From Klebsormidium nitens (lineage: Eukaryota > Plantae > Klebsormidiophyceae), in NCBI GenBank assembly GCA_000708835.1, contig DF236961.1, positions 186,001-250,000 on the forward strand: 64,000 nt of DNA, given 5' to 3'. Below, piece by piece: positions 3,750-13,727 of the stretch; position 1 is the first letter of the stretch, and each line of letters opens with the position of its first letter. The notes beneath the pieces are model-generated. The model did not search any database. It had not been told where the DNA came from and was given only the letters and a program-made list of their open reading frames with translations. The position numbers and the translations under genes were made by a program.

Positions 3750-4670
3750 GCTTCGGAACTAGGTACTGTTAGGCCGATCTTAACGGTGTTATCTCAGCCT
3801 CTTGTGTTCCTCAGACAAGCGCTTCACTCCTTTCTGAACTGCTGAATCCTCCTGATACTGTACAGATGCCCGACCAGCTAGCATTCTCTGACAAGCTCCA
3901 GCAGCTGATTCACTCCACGCCTAATTTGGAAGTGTACCTTCCCGAAATTCTGAAGACCTTGCGAATCAGCTTGCGAATCAACTTATATTTGGATCCGGCA
4001 CCCCTTCTGATCAGCTTCCAGGCATTACGTGCAGCCAACTTAGAGTGTCCAGAACCAAACACGTTGCTACCGTAGCTAGCTACACGTTGCTAATGCAAGT
4101 TTAGCTTGAAGCTAGTCCTTGAAGAGGCAGCAGAGCAAGCAGCATTCAGGACGATGGCGCGCCCCTCTCTCTAATCCCGACGAAGTTGGAAGTTCGGCAG
4201 AGCGCCTCCACAATCCATTGACCAAGCCTTGCAGCTTGCTGCCGTCACCGAAGTCCCAGCCCTTCACTTCGAAATTTGAATCCGGATGGACCGGAGCACG
4301 AGCTGTTGGTCACCGAATTCTGGCCGTCCATGCGCCGAATGGAATGTCGCCACGTACTGGCGGGGGCTGTTCCAAACCCTAGATCAGCCGCGCGCGCTTA
4401 CGCGGCCGCCCCTGAGTCCTAGCCGCGCGGGCCAGATCATGATCGGATGAAAGCTCTCGGCGGCCCGGCCGCGACGCGCAGATAACTTCAAGTTCAGTCT
4501 TGTCGAAAAGTTCAGATCTTCATTCTCAAAAGTCGAGACGTGACGGTGAGAGGACTTTGTAGCTGGCGCAGGGGCGCTTCTCTCTCCTGCTTTTCACTTG
4601 GATTTTAAGCTTTCCTGCTCAGAACCGGCGGCGTTACGGTTAGTTTCTAGGAAGGCAGGTCCCTTCCACA
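3750..4670. promoter_or_regulatory. Probable bidirectional promoter / 5' UTR region between LRL-like 1 and eRF3
   Basis: The two start codons diverge about 920 bp apart, with a GC/CpG-rich stretch at about 4380-4480. Inferred from gene arrangement only. Confidence 0.4.
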
Positions 4671-7600
4671 ATGGGGGAGCCAGATTCGTGGGAGGACATG
4701 GACGAGACTCAAGCGCCCGCAGCGCCGGGTTCGGGTGGTCAAGGGGCCCCTCGATTGAATGTCAATGCCCCCACCTTCGCCTTCAATCCCTCTGCGTCCA
4801 CTTATGCGCCACCTTACGGGTACGGTGGTGCTCCAGGCGGCTATGGGGCGCCGGCTGCTTATGGTGCCCCTGGTTATGGCTACCAGCAGCCAGGATATGG
4901 GGCCGGGTACCAACAACCGGGCTACCAGCAGCCCGGGTATCAGCAGCCAGGTTATCAGCAACCTGGGTATCAGCAGCAGGGGGGCGGCTATGGTGCACAA
5001 GGAGGGGGATATGGTCAGCAAGGGGGTTATGGTGGCAGGGGTTATGGGGCCGGTGGCTCTAGTTATCAGGCGCCCCAGTCTCGGGGTCAGGCACCTCCGC
5101 ATGCAGCGCAACCGAAGGCAACAGAGAAGGGCCCGGCGAAGGTGGGGGTGATTGGCATACCGAAGGATCAGCCGGCGAAGCAGGCTGTGATTGGGATGCC
5201 GAAGGACCAGCCTGCGAAAGTCGGGGTTATCCAACCCAAGGAGAAACCCGCGGTCAGCACAAGCGGCTCTGTCGGGCCCAAACCAGCTGCGAAGGTCGGG
5301 GTCATCTCAGCCAAGCCGCAGCCTGCGGAGGCAAAGGCAGAGACGACCAGCGCAAAGGAAGCTCCAGCTGCCAAAGCGGATGCAGCAAAAGTGGAGACGG
5401 CTGCAGAGGAGAAGATGGAAGTGGACTCGCAGTCGAAGGAGGACCATGTAGGACAGAAGGAGGATCGTGACAGCTCAGGTAGAGCATTGCAACCAGTCTC
5501 CTATTGGTGTTCTCAAGCAGCAGTTGATGTGAAGGATTTTGCGCAAATTGGAGGTTTCCACACCCTGTGTATGCGCATTCCTCTGTGTGCGGGTCTGCCA
5601 AAAGGTGGTGGCAGATATGAAGGACAGTGGGCAAAGCAAGGTATGGTGAAATGTAATGCCATTTTGTATTGATGAAGTGCCTCTTAAGTGCCTCTTCATA
5701 TCTTCAGATTGCCTCTATGTGCAGGAGTTGAGGCAGCAGCAAGCGGGATCGCAGCAATGGAAGTATCGGATCAGCATGATACAGGTCAGTCAGAGTCTAC
5801 AGAATCAAGGAACACTGGAAGGCGCCGAAAGCTATTGCTTGCTTAGCCAGAAAAGCTTGGTAATGGTGTGTTTTGCAATGATGCTTTTGCAGAAATCGAA
5901 GACAAGGTGTGCCTTAGGAGAGACTTTTTGGATCACTGATGGCAGTTCCCCGTTACCGTGGGTTATCAATCTTTCATCAAGCCATTCTGGAACAAATAAG
6001 CTTAGGGTTCTCTGATGAGCGCTTGAAAAGAGAACCGACTACTTGAGGGTCCTACTTGAGAATCGCGAGTTCAGTCCCTGGAACAGTCCATGCATTGCTT
6101 GCACTCTTTGTATTGGCGTATTGCTGGTTGATTACCAACTAGTTTTATCCGCATACAAAAGAGATCTACACCAGGGCATATGGGGTGCTTTTTTCTGCAA
6201 TGCAGAGAGGAGAGCAGGAAAGGAGGCGGAATCTCATGAGGAAGAAGAGGATCACCATGAGAAGCATCATGACGCTGAAACGGCGGAGCCGGCAGACTTC
6301 GGGGATGACAGGGAGCATTTGAACCTGGTGTTCATTGGCCACGTTGGTGAGTTCGTTGGCGCTTTTGGAGACGCTTCCGTGAGGCTTGGAAACTGCCGTC
6401 AGGCCGTGGCGCTTCCGCATGCAGTTTACCACACTGCCCCAAAACATACTTGGTTACAATCGAAGCCATGTCTTGCAGTGGTCTGATGAGGTTCTGCGAG
6501 CGGTGGGACGAAAAACAAGCAGATATGCTCTGTGGCAGATGCATCTCAATGATGTCAGGAGGATTGCATCTGACGCTTTTTGTCAGAATGCAACCAGATC
6601 CGCCCCACTGCATTTTGTCAGACTTTTGGCTCAGTTGTCCTCAGCATTGCAGACCAATCAGCTTGTAATAGCAACGAGCTCAGCTGAGGCTCCTAGCATT
6701 TAGCAGGGGTAAGGAATGTTGGGTCTAGAAAGAAGCAATGCATCCCGCTGAAGCTAGTCGTCAAGCCACCAGATCCTAAGAAGCGGGTTTCTCAGGCAAC
6801 TGACCTTGCACGGAGGAACCCCCAGAGTCCTCCCTTCAAGTTGGCTAAAACGTATTTTTCTTTACGTAATGCTTGAGACCGGGTGAGGTTAGTCTGATGG
6901 TTAGGGTGGGCTTGGGGTGCGGAGCATGTGAATTTGGGGTTCGCATTCACACTCGCAACTTGTCCAGGCGCACAGGCCGCAAGTAGTCAGCAAGTGATTG
7001 AGCAGCCTCTTTAGCATGTTCTTTGCCAAGTTGAATCGTAAATGCACTAGCTCGTTTAGAATGAACACAAGAGATTGGCCTCTCGGTTGCTGCAGATGCT
7101 GGGAAGTCCACCATTGGTGGCCAGATCCTGTACCTCACAGGCTCGGTAGACGAGAGAACCATTCAGAAGTACGAGCGGGAGGCAAAGGACAAAAACAGAG
7201 ACAGTTGGTGAGTTGTTCTGACTTGATTGGCCAGGTAAAAGCAGGCACTCCTGTGCTATGGTGGGGGTGTTATCCTTGGCCTCATTTTGTCGGCTCCTAC
7301 TGCATGGCTCCTTTTGAGATTTCGTTAGAGGGTGGCCCAGCTTCGGTTTGGGAGGTCACTTTAGAGCTGGATGAGGCATGGAGACATATCGCTCATGATC
7401 GTAAGGACCAGTCCCAGTCTGCTTAGAAGATTTGGCGGTCTGCCTTCCCCTCGCTCCTTCATCAAGATTACAGGGTTGCACACACAGCTTGACGTCTAGT
7501 TTCAAGCCATTTAGGTCGAGAGAGGGATTTTGAAGCCCTATGGTCGCACATTTATGCGTTTGCTTGTAAATTATGGATCTGTTTCAAGTCCTGATAAGGT

Positions 7601-10600
7601 CTTACCTCGGCTAAGAACTAACCACTCTTGCAAACCTTGTTCCTCTGCAGGTACATGGCATACATCATGGACACAAACGAGGAGGAGCGCGCCAAGGGCA
7701 AGACGGTGGAGGTGGGGCGAGCAACGTTTGAGACCGACAAGCGGCGTTACACCGTCCTGGATGCACCAGGGCACAAGAACTACGTCCCAAATATGATCAG
7801 CGGGGCGTCGCAAGCCGATGTCGGAGTGCTGGTAAGTCTTCTCTTGGCAGAAAGATGCCATTTGGAGGTGATTGATTTGTTATTAATTGTCTTGCATATG
7901 CATGATTGATTAAAGCCAGTGCTATGGCGATCGAGCGGTTTGCCATGCTGGTAAACGGTCAGCAGGAAGCAGTGTTCAGCCTGTGTATCATTTCGAGTGG
8001 ACGAGATCGTGAGCCAGTATGATGCACAGTTCGGCCGAGGATGAAGCCTGGCGGTGGCTTGCGATTCTTGTCGAGGGCACTGGCCGCCCAAACTGGAGGA
8101 CAGTCATTTTCTGCAATCTCACAAATCCGACTTCGAACGCGAGTTTCCTCGTTGCTGCACAATCCAGCCGTCCTATTGGGTTGCAGAAGTCTACAAGAGC
8201 AAAGTCATTTCGTGGTGTGGTCTCTCTTCTGTCAGCGGTTGGACTTGCAAAGCTTTTTCTTTGTCATCAAACGTGTTTGCTTAACGTTGCAGGTAGTGTC
8301 TGCTCGAAGGGAGATTTTCAAGATCTATTCAGAGGGAAGGGTACTGATCGATACCCTGGTATGTTTCGTTAAAAGTTTATTGCCCCAAAAGGACAAGTTC
8401 TGAGATTAGGTTCAAGCAGGGTGCAGTGATTGATACCGAGGTTACTTTCGCCGCAGGTCATCTCTGCGCGGAAGGGCGAGTTCGAGACTGGGTTTGAGCG
8501 GGGGGGCCAGACGCGGGAGCATGCGCTGCTCGCCAAGACGTTGGGGATCTCGAAGCTGGTGGTGGTAGTCAACAAGATGGATGAGCCCTCCGTGCAGTGG
8601 GCGCAGGAGAGGTGCGCACCTTGACTGATGCCGTTCTGAGATTATCGTGCAATTTTTGCAATCGTTGAATCGGTTTGGGACCCCTCCCCTCTTGAAGGTC
8701 CCAGAATCGATGCTCTTCCCTTTTCGCTCCGGACGGTCTTCGGAATCATCAAAGCAGCAGGTTATTCCATGGCGCTTCTACGTAGATTGCCAGTCCCCCA
8801 TTCTCTGTTTGTCAGATTGAGAGCGATCCTCGTAGATCAAAGAAACGCTTGGTCTTTTATCGAGTTTCTTAGCTTGATTCTGGACGTTCCAGCACATTTT
8901 TGGCCTGGGAAGGGATTTACCTTTCCCGAGTTCCTTTGTATCGTTCTGTTGTCCCTCCTTTCCCAGTCGTCGTTTTGCTTCAAAGTCTTAACTTGTTTTT
9001 CCTCCCTGCAGGTTCGACGAGATTGTCACGAAGATGTCTCCGTTCCTTCGGGGATCGGGCTTCAACCTCAAGAAAGGTGAGTGTAAATACTGAAGCAGCT
9101 AGAACCTTTGTCTGTGGTTCGTTAGGTCTGTGTTGGAAGAGTCGTCCGATTTTCCAGATTTTACCGGTCCTCAAGGCCGAAATATCTCTTCCTCAGGATC
9201 TTTGGGCTCGTTCTCGTTTCCTTCTCATACATGCCCTTGTCGCCCACTCTGAGCAACCTCTGTCCAAAGCAATGACCTTAGAGATGTAATCTGTTCTGAC
9301 GGTGACAAGAATGTTCACATCAGGAATGGGACTGGATTCTAATTAGTCGATCTTGCAATTGCCCTCTCCAGACGTCGTCTTCCTGCCCATCTCCGGTCTG
9401 CACGGCGTCAACATGAAGGAGCGCCCTTCCAAGGAGACCATCCCTTGGTACGAGGGCCCCTGCTTCTTCGAAGTCCTGGACAACCTGGAGTCGCCCGACA
9501 GGGACCCCACTAAGCCCTTCAGGTGAGAAACAGAACGGCCGGGCTGTGTTGACAGTGCAAAGCTTGTGATATCCGAGGACCTTTTTCAACGCAACTTGAG
9601 CGCCTTATGCACGGCCCAGAGGGCAGCTTTTTGCATGACCGATTTCAAGGGCAGGAGCACAGTTGATGCTCAGGAATGCTCAAAGCCGTAGACCGAGAAT
9701 ATTTTCGTGTTTCCGGCCGTGATTCTGTGACTCAAAACTAATCCCGCATCCTCCCCGCTATATGTGCCTCCCTACAAAGGGAAAAACGTGGGCACGGTCC
9801 TTTGGTGCAGGTAGTGTACCCCCCTTGTCCGCACGGACTGCTTCCCTATGCTCTCCGTTCACTGCAGGACTCTCGTTTCGTAGCACTCAAGGTCGGTGCA
9901 AGAGCAGTCTTCCCGCAACAACATGTTACGTGGGCTTCGTAAATGTAGGCAGTCTCAGCATCTCTCCCCCCTTTCTTGCAGGATGCCCTCCAGAGCACAA
10001 ACAAGAACAAGGGCACGATCGTGATGGGCACAAGAAGTGTAGCCCCTTTTGGAACCCTTTTCCCCTGACAGCGGATCCATTCTCTTATCTGTGCTCCAGT
10101 CTGCAGGATGCCCTTCCAGGAGGCAAACAAGGACATGGACGCCCGTGGTCGGTGCAAGATTACTGGTGACTCCAATGACAGACGTTCTTGCCTCTGAAAG
10201 TGGGAATCGGTCTCAGCATCCCTCCTTTACCTCTCTTTGCAGGATGCCCGTCCAGGACAAGTACAAGGACATGGGCACGCGTGGTTGGTGCAAGAGCAAT
10301 GATTACTCCAATGATTGAAATCTTGCCTCTGAAAGTGGAAATTATATCTTCCTTTTTCCTCTGTTCGCAGGATGCCCCTCCAGGACAAGTACAAGGACAC
10401 GGGCATGATCGAGTGACATGTGCTCCATTTATTGACGGGGATGAACTCACTGGTCCTGCTTCTGAAACTACACACATTTTTAATCTTTGTTGATTGTTTT
10501 CTTCAGGATGCCCCTCCAGGACAAGTACAAGGACATGGACTTGGGTGATCAGTGCAACAAGAGAGGGGTCCCTCCAGTCCCTCCCTTCGACTACTTCTCC

Positions 10601-13600
10601 TTTTAGTGTCTCTTTTCCCCCTTGCAAGATCCCCCCAGGACAAAAAACACATTTGTCTTCAGACGAAGTTTAAAAGAGCACTTGTTTTATTGTCTTCTGC
10701 CGGACCCCTGCAAAGTGGATTTATTCTCCGTCCTGCAGAATGCCCCTCCAGGACAAGTACAAGGACATGGGCACGGTGGTCATGGGCAAGATCGAGTCGG
10801 GGACGGTGCACCGAGGCGACGGCCTGCTGGTGATGCCCAACAAGATCCCCGTCAAAGTGGTGGCGATCTTCCGCGACGCCGACGAGGTCCGCGCCGCGCG
10901 GCCAGGGGAGAACCTGCGCATCCGGCTGTCGGGCATCGAGGATGAGGACATCACGCCGGGATATGTGCTCTCGGCGCAGAGTGAGTTCGCTTTCAGCAGC
11001 ATGAGTGAGCTTCTTGGATTTGTCCTGGGGCAGATCTGGGTTTAGTGATCTGGGCTAGTGGGCTCCTCTTAACTGGTTGTTGGGCACAGAAAGACGAGGA
11101 TTTACCTCCAATACGTGCTCTTGTCACAGAGTGGGGTGTCAGTTTGCGGCAGGCTTGGGAATACATTGTTGGGTTGTGGGCGGTTGAGTTGGTCTTATGA
11201 GATGATTGGCTCCTTTTGGCTTCCTTTGGTTAACAAGGACGATGACGTTACCCCCGGACGTGCTTCACTGTAGAGAAGCTTAGGTTATACTCTAGCGGAC
11301 CTAGGATGTTTCGCTGGACGAGAAGAGCAGTCTATACAGCATTAGCAACCAATTGTCACTTCAAGACGCCAGCCTCAGAGAGACACAAAAATCTCAGTGC
11401 AGACTTTTGCTCACTGAGTTTGCACGGAAGTTAAAGCCCGCCGTCGTCAAGTTTGAGGCGCAGCTGTAGAACCCGGAGCTTGACCACAAGAACTGCGTTC
11501 AATCTGCTACTCTCTACAGGGATGATTCCTGAATGATCGCCCTGAAATTCCTTGCACACTGTTTGTGCAGAGAAGCCGATCCCTGCTTTCGTCGAACCTA
11601 AGGCGCAGGTGCAGATGTTTGAGCTGCTGAAGCACAAGAGCATTCTACACAGCCTCAATGCTGAAATTCTTCGGTATAACAAACCTCTCAAAACGGCCGA
11701 AGCCCTGACGAAAACTTCCGCTCACTGGGTATGCAGAGAAACCCAATCCAGCGGTGGTCGAGTTCGAGACGCAGCTGCAGATCCTGGAGCTGCTGGACCA
11801 CAAAACCATATTCATAGCTCTCTACAAAGCAGTTCGTTCCACGAACGATTTGCTATCAATTGTACTCAAAAAACAGTTTCGTTGACTTCTCTGTAGAGAA
11901 GCCAATCCCGGCGGTCGTCGAATTCAAAGCGCAGCTGCAGATCGTGGAGCTGGTGGACCACAAGACATCTTCACAGCTTTCCACAAAGGTGTTCCTTCAA
12001 GAACGTTGAACTTTGAGTTCGTACTCAAACATCTTGCTTGTCTGTTTTGTAGAGAGGCCAATCCCCGCCGTCGTCGAGTTCGAGGCGCAGCTGCAGATTT
12101 TGGAGCTGTTGGACCACAAGAGCATCTTCACGGCGGGGTACAAGGCGGTGCTGCACATACACAGCATCGTGGAGGAGTGCGAGGTTGTGGAGCTGCTCTC
12201 GCAGATCGACCCCAAGACCAAGAAGAAGCTCAAGAAGAAGCCGCTCTTCGTCAAGGGGAACACGGTCGTCACGTGCCGCATCCAGGTAAGGGCTTTGGGC
12301 TTCATTGATTTTGCGCTCACGATTGAACTTCTAGTCCTTGTCTTACAATATTATTGTGTTTCTTGGTCCATAAAGCTTTGGTTTGAGGATGCGAAGACGG
12401 AGGAGTTGTGACTCTAAGACCAAGAAGAAGCTCACAAAGAAGCCGCTCTTCGTCAAGGGGAACACGGTCGTCATGTGTCGCATCCAGGTGAGGGGTTATA
12501 TTGAAGGTTTCGAGTCTTCGGATTTTGAATGGTTGTCTGTACTATGGGGGCTTGAGGGTTACACCTCATCTGATCTGAGGAACTTGGGCATCAAAGATCT
12601 AGAAGGAGCCCAAGAAGAAGCTGCTGTTCGTCAAGGGGAACACCTTCGTCACGTGTTTCATGGTGGGTCTCAGACCCGAGCTTCTGCGATTCCAGCGTGA
12701 GGGTTATCTAACATTTCTCAGGAGTGAGGATCGTGTCGCTTCAGAAGAAACTGCGAGGCCTCAACAAAGCTTAGTGGAAAATTGGCGCTTTCATATAGCG
12801 GAACACCGGCAGTACCAAGCGCAACTGGGTTACTTTCTTATCTCTCAATTCTAGATCAGGGCACTGGCGGGTTTTGAACTGTACTTCGATATGATGTGAA
12901 GGGCTTCAAAGGTGGTAGCGAAAATCTCACTTGAACAAGTACACTTAGGAAGTATCTCTGTCGCTCTCTCCTCGTTCTTACAACCGTCTCGCTCGCTTTG
13001 CAGGTCCAGGAAGCTATCTGCATCGAGCTTTTCTCGGACTTCCCGCAGTTGGGCCGTTTCACGCTTCGAGATGAAGGTTAGCCTTTTCGCCCTTGCCTGT
13101 AACTCTTCGATCGTACATTCCTGGCTCTCAAAGCGCGTCGTCTGGAGGTGGCGAGTCGCTGGAACAGTTTCAGAAACTGGAGCGGCAGTGGGCACGGATT
13201 GTTGACTGCAGACATTTTCATTCGACTCATGCCCGTTTCCACGGGCGTCCAGCTTTTGGGCTCTCTCAAGATAGCTGCATGCCGTCCGTTGTGCATATTT
13301 GTTCTTGCTATGCAAATGTACAAAGAAGGTAAAACGCACGAAGTTAGGAGACTAAGTAACCTGTGAACGGTGGTTTATGGGAAAGTGCGAGTTCCTTTGG
13401 GTTAGGCAGCTTTGCGGAATGGAGGTAGCGGCAATTTCGAGCTCCTCGCCGGGGGGTTCCACCTTAGGTTCGGGATCGAATTGGTGCTTATTGAGGTTCT
13501 TCCCAGGAATACATAAACCTCTTGAATGCGTTTCTCATAGTGCACAGCGCATTCGAAGTGATTGAAAGGTATGTACTTGACGTGCATAACAGTTCATCGA

Positions 13601-13727
13601 AAAGTTCGGAAATCTAATCCCGTAAACGTGCCTTGTGCGTTGCTCGAACTTACCTTGCCTTTGCATGACCGCAGGCAAGACTGTGGCCATAGGCAAGGTC
13701 ATCACTCTCCTCGACAACCAGGAGTGA
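4671..13727 (+). CDS. eRF3: Eukaryotic peptide chain release factor 3 (translational GTPase)
   Basis: Exons 4671-5478, 5725-5784, 6206-6346, 7096-7207, 7651-7831, 8457-8611, 9012-9076, 9372-9522, 10739-10980, 12053-12285, 13004-13076, 13675-13727 join in phase. Motifs: [105 protein letters not shown]-terminal overlapping PAM2-like motifs [19 protein letters not shown] (4752-4811). Confidence 0.96.
4815..5069 (+). repeat. Coding oligopeptide repeats (YQQPG x5 plus G/Y/Q-rich variants) in the eRF3 N-terminus
   Basis: Direct translation: [58 protein letters not shown]. Confidence 0.95.
6880..6943 (-). repeat. Dispersed C/A-rich repeat, copy 1 (inverted, in an eRF3 intron)
   Basis: Reverse complement cgaaccccaaattcacatgctccgcaccccaagcccaccctaaccatcagactaacctcacccg matches the copies at 35738, 49168 and 56205. 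Confidence 0.65.
9960..10738 (+). repeat. Tandem degenerate copies of the eRF3 acceptor plus exon start (5-6 units, about 125-135 bp period)
   Basis: cag|gatgccc..caggacaagtacaaggacatgggcacg-like units start at 9982, 10107, 10243, 10371 and 10507, with a degraded unit near 10628, ahead of the functional exon at 10739. Confidence 0.92.
11420..12052 (+). repeat. Tandem degenerate copies of the eRF3 acceptor plus exon start (4 units, about 150-165 bp period)
   Basis: ag|agaagccaatccc..gtcgagttcgaggcgcagctgcagat..gagctg..gaccacaag units at about 11425, 11571, 11737 and 11897; functional exon at 12053. Confidence 0.92.
12410..12665 (+). repeat. Two degenerate copies of the eRF3 exon end plus donor
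   Basis: aagaagccgctcttcgtcaaggggaacacggtcgtca..catccag|gt copies end at 12487 and 12662, downstream of the functional donor at 12285/12286. Confidence 0.9.

What the first reader, a model, noticed from the sequence alone, without database searches (positions are those of the whole stretch)
4752..5069. Sup35-like prion-like domain in an algal eRF3
Seen: after overlapping PAM2-like motifs comes an 85-aa G/Y/Q/P tract with 17 Tyr, one charged residue and five YQQPG repeats, followed by a charged K/E-rich linker and the GTPase domain. Established: yeast Sup35 has this N-M-C layout with PQGGYQQYN repeats that drive the [PSI+] prion and stress-induced condensates; to my knowledge land-plant eRF3s lack such repeats. 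Inference: a phase-separating or prion-capable termination factor in a streptophyte alga, possibly relevant to desiccation stress.
Basis: partly seen in the sequence, partly recalled or inferred. Interest (0 to 1): 0.75.

Follow-up and report, generated by a model that had tools for sequence, protein, structure and literature searches.

The report
Tyrosine-rich disordered domain in algal eRF3
The translation termination factor eRF3 of this alga (probably Klebsormidium) really does start with an expressed, conserved tyrosine/glycine/glutamine repeat domain like the repeat part of the yeast prion protein Sup35, a trait that is rare in green plants but known in fungi, and its prion or droplet behaviour is untested.

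Summary
From the ATG at 4671, exon 1 encodes:
- an acidic PDSWEDMD head;
- two overlapping PAM2-like motifs;
- an 89-aa tract (4803-5069) of G32 Y18 Q17 P10 A9 with one charged residue and five YQQPG units;
- a basic lysine-rich linker, followed by an acidic, histidine-rich stretch.

Transcript contigs from four studies splice exon 1 in frame, through a 60-nt exon, to the eRF3 GTPase.

A diverged relative (dS about 1) keeps 16 of 18 tyrosines, and dN/dS in the tract is about 0.1. The repeat units also differ at synonymous sites. The tract is therefore selected at the peptide level.

Among 119 mostly green-lineage eRF3s, only three have a comparable tract: Pycnococcus, a marine chlorophyte and an unnamed streptophyte alga. 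Land plants lack it. Fungi have it, and the literature reports it in kinetoplastids.

The tract has no asparagine and no N/Q-rich stretch, is 11% proline, and gets only a borderline prion-propensity score. Its tyrosines are very evenly spaced.

The best reading is a sticker-and-spacer domain that drives reversible assembly. A heritable prion is unlikely. This is a new member of a known kind and of moderate interest. The scan had not noted this finding before on other DNA.

The parts
4534..4670 (+). 5' UTR. Transcript contigs begin at 4534-4540. There is no upstream ATG, and the start context is CCACAATGG.
   Evidence: Contig ends in four runs, one of them preceded by an Illumina adapter. ATG scan.
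4671..5478 (+). Coding exon 1 (269 codons plus 1 nt), covering the whole N-domain and most of the linker. GT donor at 5479.
4680..4703 (+). Acidic PDSWEDMD head, shared with most green-lineage eRF3s and, as an SWED-type motif, with the fungal P0072.
   Evidence: 55 of 119 panel proteins carry it in their first 25 aa.
4752..4814 (+). Two overlapping PAM2-like motifs, [11 protein letters not shown] and [11 protein letters not shown]. This is the presumed docking site for the MLLE domain of poly(A)-binding protein.
   Evidence: Motif match, including LNVNA identical to the human-type P0033. Conserved in L001 and across the green lineage. Pfam PAM2 gives only 10.6 bits against a cut-off of 20.
4803..5069 (+). 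89-aa G/Y/Q/P/A low-complexity tract with 18 evenly spaced Tyr and one charged residue.
   Evidence: dN/dS is 0.095 against L001. No residue reaches pLDDT 70.
4878..4982 (+). Run of six (G)YQQ[PQ]G units: five YQQPG and one YQQQG. One GYGAG lies between units 1 and 2.
   Evidence: 15-nt period, 78% match; the units use different synonymous codons.
5136..5309 (+). Basic Lys/Pro/Ala linker carrying four A-K-[VQ]-[GA]-V-I-[GQS] units, at 5136, 5175, 5214 and 5289.
   Evidence: (39-nt period). L001 has four AKQGVIG units plus AKVVVIP. Related K-x-phi-x-phi-G(G) motifs occur in 36 of 150 eRF3 N-domains, against 4.9 expected.
5725..5784 (+). 60-nt exon 2, encoding (G)[19 protein letters not shown].
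   Evidence: GT..AG joints in four runs. Frame checked.
6206..6346 (+). Exon 3: an acidic, His-rich cluster ([15 protein letters not shown]...) followed by the start of the G domain (LNLVFIGHV).
   Evidence: net -10, 7 His.
7096..7209 (+). Exon 4: the G1 motif continues (D)AGKSTIGG...
7653..13727 (+). Remaining eRF3 exons: GTPase, domain 2 and domain 3, to the stop codon ending at 13727. Approximate coding blocks are 7653-7834, 8457-8612, about 9010-9075, 9371-9523, 10737-10976, 12055-12255 or a little further, about 13000-13078, and about 13677-13727. These boundaries are inferred from homology, not from reads.
   Evidence: The contig run-on matches 7653. Pfam GTP_EFTU, D2 and D3. tblastn with an intronless relative. 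eRF3A PDB hits.

Best explanation
This is the genuine, expressed N-terminal intrinsically disordered region of the alga's eRF3. The organism is probably Klebsormidium nitens, according to earlier scan notes that I did not verify.

Shown:
- Exon 1 is spliced in frame to the GTPase.
- The tract is kept under purifying selection in a relative whose synonymous sites are saturated.
- The order of parts is acidic head, PAM2-like motifs, uncharged Tyr/Gly/Gln/Pro repeat tract, basic linker, acidic His-rich linker, GTPase.

Inferred:
- The 18 evenly spaced tyrosines act as stickers, and Gly, Gln and Pro act as spacers.
- This would let eRF3 make many weak homotypic or heterotypic contacts.
- eRF3 could then assemble reversibly into condensates, or join RNP granules next to PABP, as shown for the N-domain of yeast Sup35 and for FUS-type low-complexity domains.
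- The bipartite charged, His-rich linker could tune solubility, possibly with pH.

A heritable amyloid prion state is possible but unlikely. Among green-lineage eRF3s the tract is a sporadic, lineage-specific elaboration of a variable segment that always follows the PAM2 motifs.
For: Part of the eRF3 mRNA:
- One contig in each of four runs from four studies covers 4534/4540-5478, 5725-5784, 6206-6346 and 7096-7209 with 0 mismatches and GT..AG introns removed. It runs on into the next GTPase exon.
- The frame is open across all the junctions.
- 19 runs from 7 studies hold half or more of exon 1's words.

Identity as eRF3.

Selection on the tract:
- The relative's locus L001 has the same exon 1, with 73% amino-acid identity and 16 of 18 Tyr kept.
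- dN/dS is 0.095 in the tract, 0.054 in the head, 0.14 in the linker and 0.048 in the GTPase-C exons, with dS about 1.
- The YQQPG units use all four Pro codons and all four Gly codons.
- The DNA repeat matches at only 78%.

Disorder and patterning:
- No Pfam family matches exon 1.
- No residue reaches pLDDT 70 and no secondary structure is predicted.
- The spacing of the tyrosines has sd 1.49 against 3.87 in shuffles, with none of 10,000 as low, and there are no adjacent YY pairs.

Layout compared with Sup35:
- Sup35N is enriched in Q, N, Y and G, has few charges and carries 5.5 oligopeptide repeats.
- Sup35M has positive and negative charge clusters and acts as a pH sensor.
- Both the N/Q-rich stretch and the repeats contribute to LLPS (PMC13566377).

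Distribution: only 3 of 119 panel eRF3s have 8 or more Tyr in a 60-aa window, and they fall in separate clades.
Against: - No experiment or expression-state data bear on assembly. Everything about condensation is by analogy.
- The tract lacks Asn and the N/Q-rich stretch, and is rich in Gly and Pro.
- The runs are only guessed to be RNA, although intron-free contigs imply it. A processed DNA copy is not formally excluded.
- dN/dS in a repeat tract depends on an ambiguous alignment, and synonymous sites are saturated.
- The tract could serve another role, such as a binding platform or a flexible spacer.
- Dictyostelium ERF3 aggregates under stress through its C-domain, without any Q/N-rich N-domain (PMC11537047). 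Stress assembly of eRF3 therefore does not need such a tract.
Confidence: 0.6

Rival explanations
1. A true Sup35-like prion: the tract converts to self-templating amyloid that sequesters eRF3 and heritably raises stop-codon readthrough.
For: - The N-M-C order matches, the tract is uncharged and rich in Q, Y and G, and it carries 5-6 imperfect oligopeptide repeats.
- The best 41-aa window scores 0.069 on a PAPA-type scale, just above the 0.05 threshold.
Against: - The tract has no Asn, only 19% Gln, 36% Gly and 11% Pro.
- The relative's tract scores 0.016, whereas fungal N-domains score 0.09-0.20 (propensity table from memory; simple window, not real PAPA).
- Evenly spaced aromatics with no YY pairs are the pattern reported to favour liquid over solid assemblies (my own knowledge: Martin et al. 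2020).
- Prion-forming ability is sporadic even among fungal Sup35 proteins (title of Edskes et al. 2014, cited in PMC4727409).
- Propagation needs a suitable disaggregase regime, which is unknown here.
Confidence: 0.12
2. A functionally neutral low-complexity expansion: replication slippage or compositional drift in a tolerant linker, with no role of its own.
For: - The segment after the PAM2 motifs is highly variable in length and composition among eRF3s (PMC2613156).
- Close relatives can differ completely. P0019 has the tract while its sister P0170 has no Tyr.
- There are small indels between the window and L001.
Against: - dN/dS is about 0.1 with dS about 1.
- 16 of 18 Tyr are kept, and the other two fall in indels.
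- Identical peptide units are encoded by different synonymous codons, and the DNA repeat identity is only 78%. This rules out recent slippage.
- The Tyr spacing is non-randomly regular.
Confidence: 0.1
3. The tract is mainly a binding or spacing module, not an assembly module. It could be an extended platform next to PAM2 for PABP or other partners, or a flexible tether that sets the reach between PABP and the ribosome-bound GTPase.
For: - It always lies directly after the PAM2-like motifs, in every lineage that has it.
- The second PAM2-like motif overlaps the start of the tract.
- The linker carries a separate, repeated short motif that is widespread in eRF3s, which suggests peptide-motif interactions in this region.
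Against: - Most green-lineage eRF3s manage with Pro/Ala-rich segments of similar length, so plain spacing does not need Tyr repeats.
- No partner is known.
- This reading does not exclude the best explanation.
Confidence: 0.15
4. Gene-model artefact: exon 1 belongs to another transcript or is not coding.
For: - Automatic gene callers mis-call this region. In L001, other frames were called.
- A word search with exon 1 found nothing.
Against: Spliced contigs in four studies join it in frame to the GTPase. The ORF and its start are conserved in L001. The head and PAM2 motifs match other eRF3s.
Confidence: 0.02

Closest known systems
Saccharomyces cerevisiae Sup35 (eRF3) N-M-C, and fungal Sup35 N-domains generally
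   Same: - It is the orthologous protein, with a disordered N-terminal region.
- The segment is uncharged and rich in Q, Y and G, with 5-6 imperfect oligopeptide repeats ((G)YQQPG here; Sup35 has 5.5 repeats).
- A linker with positive and negative charge clusters follows, and then the GTPase (PMC13566377).
- Non-yeast fungal eRF3s in my panel (P0072 Phaeoacremonium, P0128 Chytridium, P0042, P0093) even share the order: PAM2-like motifs, Q/G/Y tract, K-V-L-S-I-G-G-type motifs, acidic stretch.
   Different: - It has no Asn and no N/Q-rich stretch, more Gly, Pro and Ala, and shorter 5-aa units.
- PAM2-like motifs precede the tract.
- Prion and condensate behaviour are unknown.
- The tract is probably not homologous residue by residue, because its distribution in the green lineage is sporadic.
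FUS/EWS/TAF15-type [G/S]Y[G/S]-rich low-complexity domains
   Same: Tyr every 5 residues or so in a Gly/Gln matrix with almost no charge. There are 8 [GS]Y[GS] triplets and 14 GY dipeptides in 89 aa. The aromatics are evenly spaced.
   Different: It has very little Ser, contains Pro and Ala, is much shorter, and is attached to a translation GTPase and not to RRM/RGG modules. There is no sequence match to any solved chain, even at E 10.
Q/G/N/Y-rich eRF3 N-extensions of kinetoplastids (Leishmania, Trypanosoma cruzi)
   Same: Compositionally Sup35-like repeats in eRF3 outside fungi, judged non-homologous, with no evidence of prion behaviour (Atkinson et al. 2008, PMC2613156).
   Different: A different supergroup. 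I did not see those sequences here.
eRF3 N-domains of other green algae: Pycnococcus provasolii / Pseudoscourfieldia marina (P0246 cluster), a marine chlorophyte (P0019) and an unnamed streptophyte alga (P0264)
   Same: The same head and PAM2-like motifs, followed directly by a G/Y/Q-rich uncharged tract with 10-12 Tyr per 60 aa.
   Different: They are richer in Gln and His, or in Asn and Met, and lack the YQQPG unit. They lie in separate clades whose close relatives lack the tract.

Membership tests
eRF3 / GSPT translation termination GTPase | EF1A-like GTPase plus domains 2 and 3, closer to eRF3 than to EF1A or HBS1 | tested here: met
   Pfam GTP_EFTU, D2, D3 and GTP-eEF1A_C on separate exons. 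Exon 10740-10973 scores eRF3A 1e-23, EF1A 1e-6 and HBS1 4e-4. The gene is collinear with an intronless plant eRF3.
eRF3 / GSPT translation termination GTPase | The N-terminal extension is part of the same mRNA and reading frame | tested here: met
   Spliced contigs in four runs from four studies. The frame is open across three junctions.
PAM2 motif (PABP MLLE ligand) | L-N-x-x-A-x-x-F-x-P type peptide recognised by Pfam PF07145 | tested here: inconclusive
   PF07145 scores 10.6 bits against a cut-off of 20, E 0.51. LNVNA..F matches the human-type eRF3 P0033 and is conserved in green-lineage eRF3s. One panel protein (P0255) carries a precomputed PF07145 hit. Binding was not tested.
Sup35-type prion domain (N-M-C) | N-proximal low-complexity region enriched in Q/N, Tyr and Gly with very few charged residues | tested here: met
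   G32 Y18 Q17 P10 A9 S2 R1 in 89 aa. Asn is absent, so the Q/N part of the feature rests on Gln alone.
Sup35-type prion domain (N-M-C) | Imperfect oligopeptide repeats | tested here: met
   Five YQQPG units plus one YQQQG. TRF finds a 15-nt period with 5 copies.
Sup35-type prion domain (N-M-C) | N/Q-rich stretch ahead of the repeats | tested here: not met
   Residues 45-69 are G/A/P/Y with no Asn or Gln. PMC13566377 reports this stretch as dispensable for prion formation in yeast.
Sup35-type prion domain (N-M-C) | Middle domain with clusters of positive and negative charge | tested here: met
   Residues 134-218 have net +9 and 219-269 net -6. The exon-3 piece has net -10 with 7 His.
Sup35-type prion domain (N-M-C) | Predicted prion propensity above threshold (PAPA, PLAAC) | tested here: inconclusive
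Real PAPA and PLAAC were not available.
Sup35-type prion domain (N-M-C) | Forms self-propagating amyloid, or stress-induced condensates | not testable with these tools
   Needs yeast Sup35C-fusion assays, SDD-AGE, ThT, and in vitro or in vivo condensation assays.
FUS-type tyrosine-rich low-complexity domain | Many [G/S]Y[G/S] triplets in an uncharged disordered region | tested here: met
   8 triplets and 18 Tyr in 89 aa. No residue reaches pLDDT 70. This is a compositional class, not a homologous family.

The most novel reading that the evidence does not exclude
The alga's eRF3 is a stress-switchable termination factor. The Tyr repeat tract would drive reversible, or even self-templating, assembly that lowers the pool of active eRF3 and changes stop-codon readthrough or mRNA decay during drying, freezing or energy loss. 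That would be the first Sup35-like switch outside fungi. In addition, the shared order (PAM2, Q/G/Y tract, K-x-phi-x-phi-GG motifs, acidic stretch, GTPase) in fungi and green algae would be an ancestral eukaryotic eRF3 design that has been lost repeatedly.
Probability: 0.2. Interest if true: 0.8.

Novelty: new member of a known kind. Interest (0 to 1): 0.5.

Why it matters
Sup35 is the textbook case of a translation factor whose disordered head makes prions and protective condensates. Whether that is a fungal oddity or a recurrent solution is still open.

Here a streptophyte alga, from the lineage leading to land plants, has an expressed eRF3 head of the same compositional kind, with the same order of parts, and selection maintains it. 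A few other green algae have one too, while their close relatives and all sampled land plants do not.

That gives natural 'with and without' pairs for testing what such a domain does for termination, mRNA decay and stress tolerance. It also gives a non-fungal N-domain for the standard yeast swap assays. It does not show that the alga has a prion.

Tried and rejected
- Word search with exon 1. None of the 8000 scored candidates passed E 1e-5. Low-complexity words crowd out relatives, the length window of 148-470 aa excludes full-length eRF3, and gene callers did not call this ORF in L001. The blank therefore says nothing.
- Word search with the head of P0264, residues 1-70. Only 7 candidates, and only the query itself was recovered. 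Uninformative.
- Metagenome scan with the exon-1 alignment. One locus, L002, an intronless plant-type eRF3 (probably a bryophyte) without the tract. I used it only to map exons.
- PDB sequence search with the tract at E 10. No hit.
- ESM Atlas look-alikes for exon 1. Best score 0.78, which is noise level.
- Pfam on exon 1: nothing. PAM2 is sub-threshold.
- The first dN/dS run on the GTPase exons had one block shifted by a codon. Corrected.
- Literature searches for an algal or plant eRF3 prion-like domain found nothing relevant. The library holds open-access papers only, so this is weak evidence of novelty.
- I rejected the idea that Dictyostelium ERF3 is a precedent. [quoted passage not shown]
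- I built and searched no joined spliced protein. Exons were searched, translated and compared one by one by reference. As a result, the alga's own full-length protein was never retrieved, and it was not placed in the tree.
Full report
**What is there.** On the + strand an ORF opens at ATG 4671. Its product reads, in order:
- [12 protein letters not shown], an acidic head.
- [11 protein letters not shown] and [11 protein letters not shown], two overlapping PAM2-like motifs (4752-4814).
- An 89-aa tract (residues 45-133, nt 4803-5069) made of G32 Y18 Q17 P10 A9 S2 R1, so one charged residue.
- A Lys/Pro/Ala-rich basic stretch and then an acidic one.

YQQPG occurs five times (nt 4881, 4908, 4923, 4938, 4953), followed by YQQQG. 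This is the only Tyr-dense G/Q/Y tract in six-frame translation of the whole window.

**Is it part of eRF3?** Yes. Exon 1 is held by 19 runs from 7 studies. I laid four runs from four different studies on 4400-7300. Each gave a single contig of 2.46-2.76 kb with no mismatch. Each contig covers 4534/4540-5478, 5725-5784, 6206-6346 and 7096-7209, skips three GT..AG introns, and runs on with letters that match the next GTPase exon at 7653.

I translated the exons one at a time with phase bookkeeping. The frame stays open...[81 protein letters not shown].... This revealed a 60-nt exon 2 that I had missed by eye.

There is no ATG in the 5' UTR. The downstream exons carry GTP_EFTU, domain 2 and domain 3. 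The exon at 10740-10973 matches eRF3A chains at 1e-23, against 1e-6 for EF1A and 4e-4 for HBS1.

The runs are only guessed to be RNA. Intron-free contigs in small assemblies from several studies are what transcripts give. A processed DNA copy is not formally excluded.

**Organism.** Earlier notes of this scan call the genome Klebsormidium nitens. I did not verify this. It fits two observations. The holders carry two organism labels that both have identical sequence. The closest panel proteins are streptophytes at 72-78% identity.

**Is the tract maintained?**
- A representative search with one eRF3 exon found a 91%-identical fragment (P0001). Its contig (L001, a JGI metagenome, 100 kb) carries a collinear eRF3 gene.
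- Its exon 1 begins with the same [13 protein letters not shown]. It keeps the PAM2-like motifs and has a slightly shorter tract, with YQQPG four times plus YQQPA.
- Exon 1 is 73% identical at the protein level. Sixteen of 18 tyrosines are kept, and the other two fall in small indels.
- By Nei-Gojobori counting, synonymous sites are about saturated (dS 0.95-2.2). dN/dS is 0.095 in the tract, 0.054 in the head, 0.14 in the linker and 0.048 in 349 GTPase-C codons.
- Within the window, the five identical YQQPG peptides use all four Pro codons and all four Gly codons. The 15-nt DNA repeat matches at only 78%.

The repeat is therefore old and is selected as peptide. It is not a fresh slippage product. 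One caveat applies: alignments of repeats are ambiguous, and saturation makes dS rough.

**Physical character.**
- Exon 1 matches no Pfam family.
- A single-sequence AlphaFold model has no residue at pLDDT 70 or more and no secondary structure. This is weak evidence, but it is the result expected of a disordered region.
- Tyr spacing is 2-7 residues (mean 5.1, sd 1.49), against sd 3.87 in shuffles. None of 10,000 shuffles is as regular, and there are no adjacent tyrosines.
- There are 8 [GS]Y[GS] triplets.
- The linker is bipartite: net +9 for residues 134-218, then net -6, and then an exon-3 piece with net -10 and seven His just before the G domain.

**Comparison with Sup35.** A 2026 deletion study defines the parts (PMC13566377):
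- Sup35N (1-123) is enriched in Q, N, Tyr and Gly, with few charges. It is divided into an N/Q-rich stretch, 5.5 oligopeptide repeats and a C-terminal piece.
- Sup35M (124-253) has clusters of positive and negative charge and acts as a pH sensor.
- Sup35C is the folded termination domain.
- Both the N/Q-rich stretch and the repeats contribute to phase separation and fibrils.
- The repeats and the C-terminal piece matter for prion inheritance.

The algal protein meets the composition, repeat, charged-linker and orthology criteria. It does not have the N/Q-rich stretch and has no Asn at all.

The published threshold is 0.05. Real PAPA and PLAAC were not available.

The title of Edskes et al. 2014, cited in PMC4727409, records that prion-forming ability is sporadic even among fungal Sup35 proteins. 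I therefore rate a heritable prion as unlikely (about 0.12). I rate reversible, Tyr-driven assembly as the most likely mechanism. That part is inference by analogy with Sup35N and FUS-type domains. The idea that evenly spaced aromatics favour liquid states rests on my own knowledge of Martin et al. 2020.

**How unusual is it?** Two searches supplied the panel. The representative search and a word search with the GTPase part of a hit (P0019) gave 119 mostly green-lineage eRF3s with a G1 motif. Fifty-five of them have the complete PDSWED-type head.

Among those 55, the highest Tyr count in any 60-aa window of the N-domain is:

| Max Tyr per 60 aa | Proteins |
|---|---|
| 0-1 | 46 |
| 2 | 1 |
| 4-6 (mostly gymnosperms, Y/P/N-rich) | 6 |
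| 10 | 2 |

The window has 13.

The Tyr-rich ones are:
- P0246, the Pycnococcus provasolii / Pseudoscourfieldia marina cluster.
- P0264, an unnamed EukProt transcriptome.
- P0019, a marine metagenome protein that lacks the head (12 Tyr per 60 aa).

Chlorokybus, Coleochaete, liverworts, mosses, a lycophyte, ferns and angiosperms lack the tract. The Chara model lacks the head and is not informative.

In a tree of the GTPase-C part, P0264 sits among streptophyte algae next to P0211, which lacks the tract. P0019 is sister to P0170, which has no Tyr. Pycnococcus is separate. The trait is therefore sporadic in the green lineage, with several gains or losses. The window's own protein is not in that tree, because I built no joined model.

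Outside plants, fungal eRF3s in the panel have PAM2-like motifs followed by Q/G/Y tracts (Phaeoacremonium P0072, Chytridium P0128, P0042, P0093). Atkinson et al. 2008 already reported Gln/Gly/Asn/Tyr repeats in fungal and kinetoplastid eRF3 and judged them non-homologous (PMC2613156). An et al. 2016 describe deep conservation of the Q-rich Sup35 domain in Ascomycota (PMC4727409). Dictyostelium ERF3 lacks such a region (PMC11537047).

I found no paper on an algal or plant eRF3 of this kind. That is only as strong as an open-access library allows.

**Verdict.**
- The domain is a real, constrained low-complexity head of eRF3, similar to the Sup35 oligopeptide-repeat region and to FUS-type domains. 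It is rare among green-lineage eRF3s and absent from the land plants sampled.
- 'Prion-capable' and 'desiccation-related' are untested, and the composition argues more for reversible assembly than for amyloid.

It is a new member of a known kind, and the interest is moderate.

**Limits.**
Exons were handled one by one by reference.
- Boundaries of exons after 7209 are inferred from homology.
- The panel is the best 120-150 hits of two searches, not a complete census. Many metagenome and Logan proteins have truncated N-termini.

Noticed in passing
window 5136-5309; L001 4983-5165; panel proteins P0219, P0225, P0042, P0072, P0246, P0214: The basic linker carries four A-K-[VQ]-[GA]-V-I-[GQS] units, and the relative has four AKQGVIG plus AKVVVIP. 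A related K-x-phi-x-phi-G(G) peptide (KKELVIGG, KVLSIGG, KPVSISIGG, KLSIGG) occurs in 36 of 150 eRF3 N-domains from green algae and fungi, often repeated, against about 5 expected from shuffles. It looks like an undescribed short linear motif of eRF3 linkers with an unknown partner.
   Followed up: partly
window 9960-10738, 11420-12052, and also 12374-12700: The introns flanking two eRF3 exons hold decayed tandem copies of the neighbouring exon edge. [15 protein letters not shown] copies lie upstream of 10737, and KPIPAVVEF...-like copies upstream of 12055. [21 protein letters not shown] copies lie downstream of that exon, at about 12374-12470 and 12603-12660. The upstream arrays are other findings of this scan. 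The downstream, donor-side copies may not be.
   Followed up: no
window 5725-5784: A 60-nt exon lies between the N-domain exon and the first GTPase exon. It is present in all four transcript contigs and is easy to miss by eye.
   Followed up: yes
window 6206-6300: A Glu/His cluster ([15 protein letters not shown]; 7 His in the 46-aa exon-3 piece) lies just before the G domain. It is a candidate pH-sensitive element, by analogy with the pH-sensing Sup35 M domain.
   Followed up: no
L001 (JGI metagenome 3300060284, contig Ga0590114_0001167) 4527-12750: A 100-kb metagenome contig carries a collinear eRF3 gene of a related alga. Its GTPase-C is 94% identical at the protein level, with dS about 0.95. 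It is useful as a comparison genome for this window. The automatic gene calls there missed the exon-1 ORF and called other frames.
   Followed up: partly
panel proteins P0241, P0247, P0256, P0265, P0273, P0277, P0287, P0303: Gymnosperm eRF3s (Araucaria, Wollemia, Ginkgo, Cryptomeria, and four unnamed panel proteins, P0256, P0273, P0277 and P0287, with the same kind of N-terminus) keep a weaker Tyr/Pro/Asn-rich segment (3-7 Tyr) at the same place after the PAM2 motifs. Bryophyte, fern and angiosperm proteins do not.
   Followed up: no
P0259 (Chara braunii model): The annotated 336-aa N-terminus of the Chara braunii eRF3 model lacks the conserved PDSWED head and the PAM2 motifs, and looks like a mis-predicted 5' end.
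   Followed up: no
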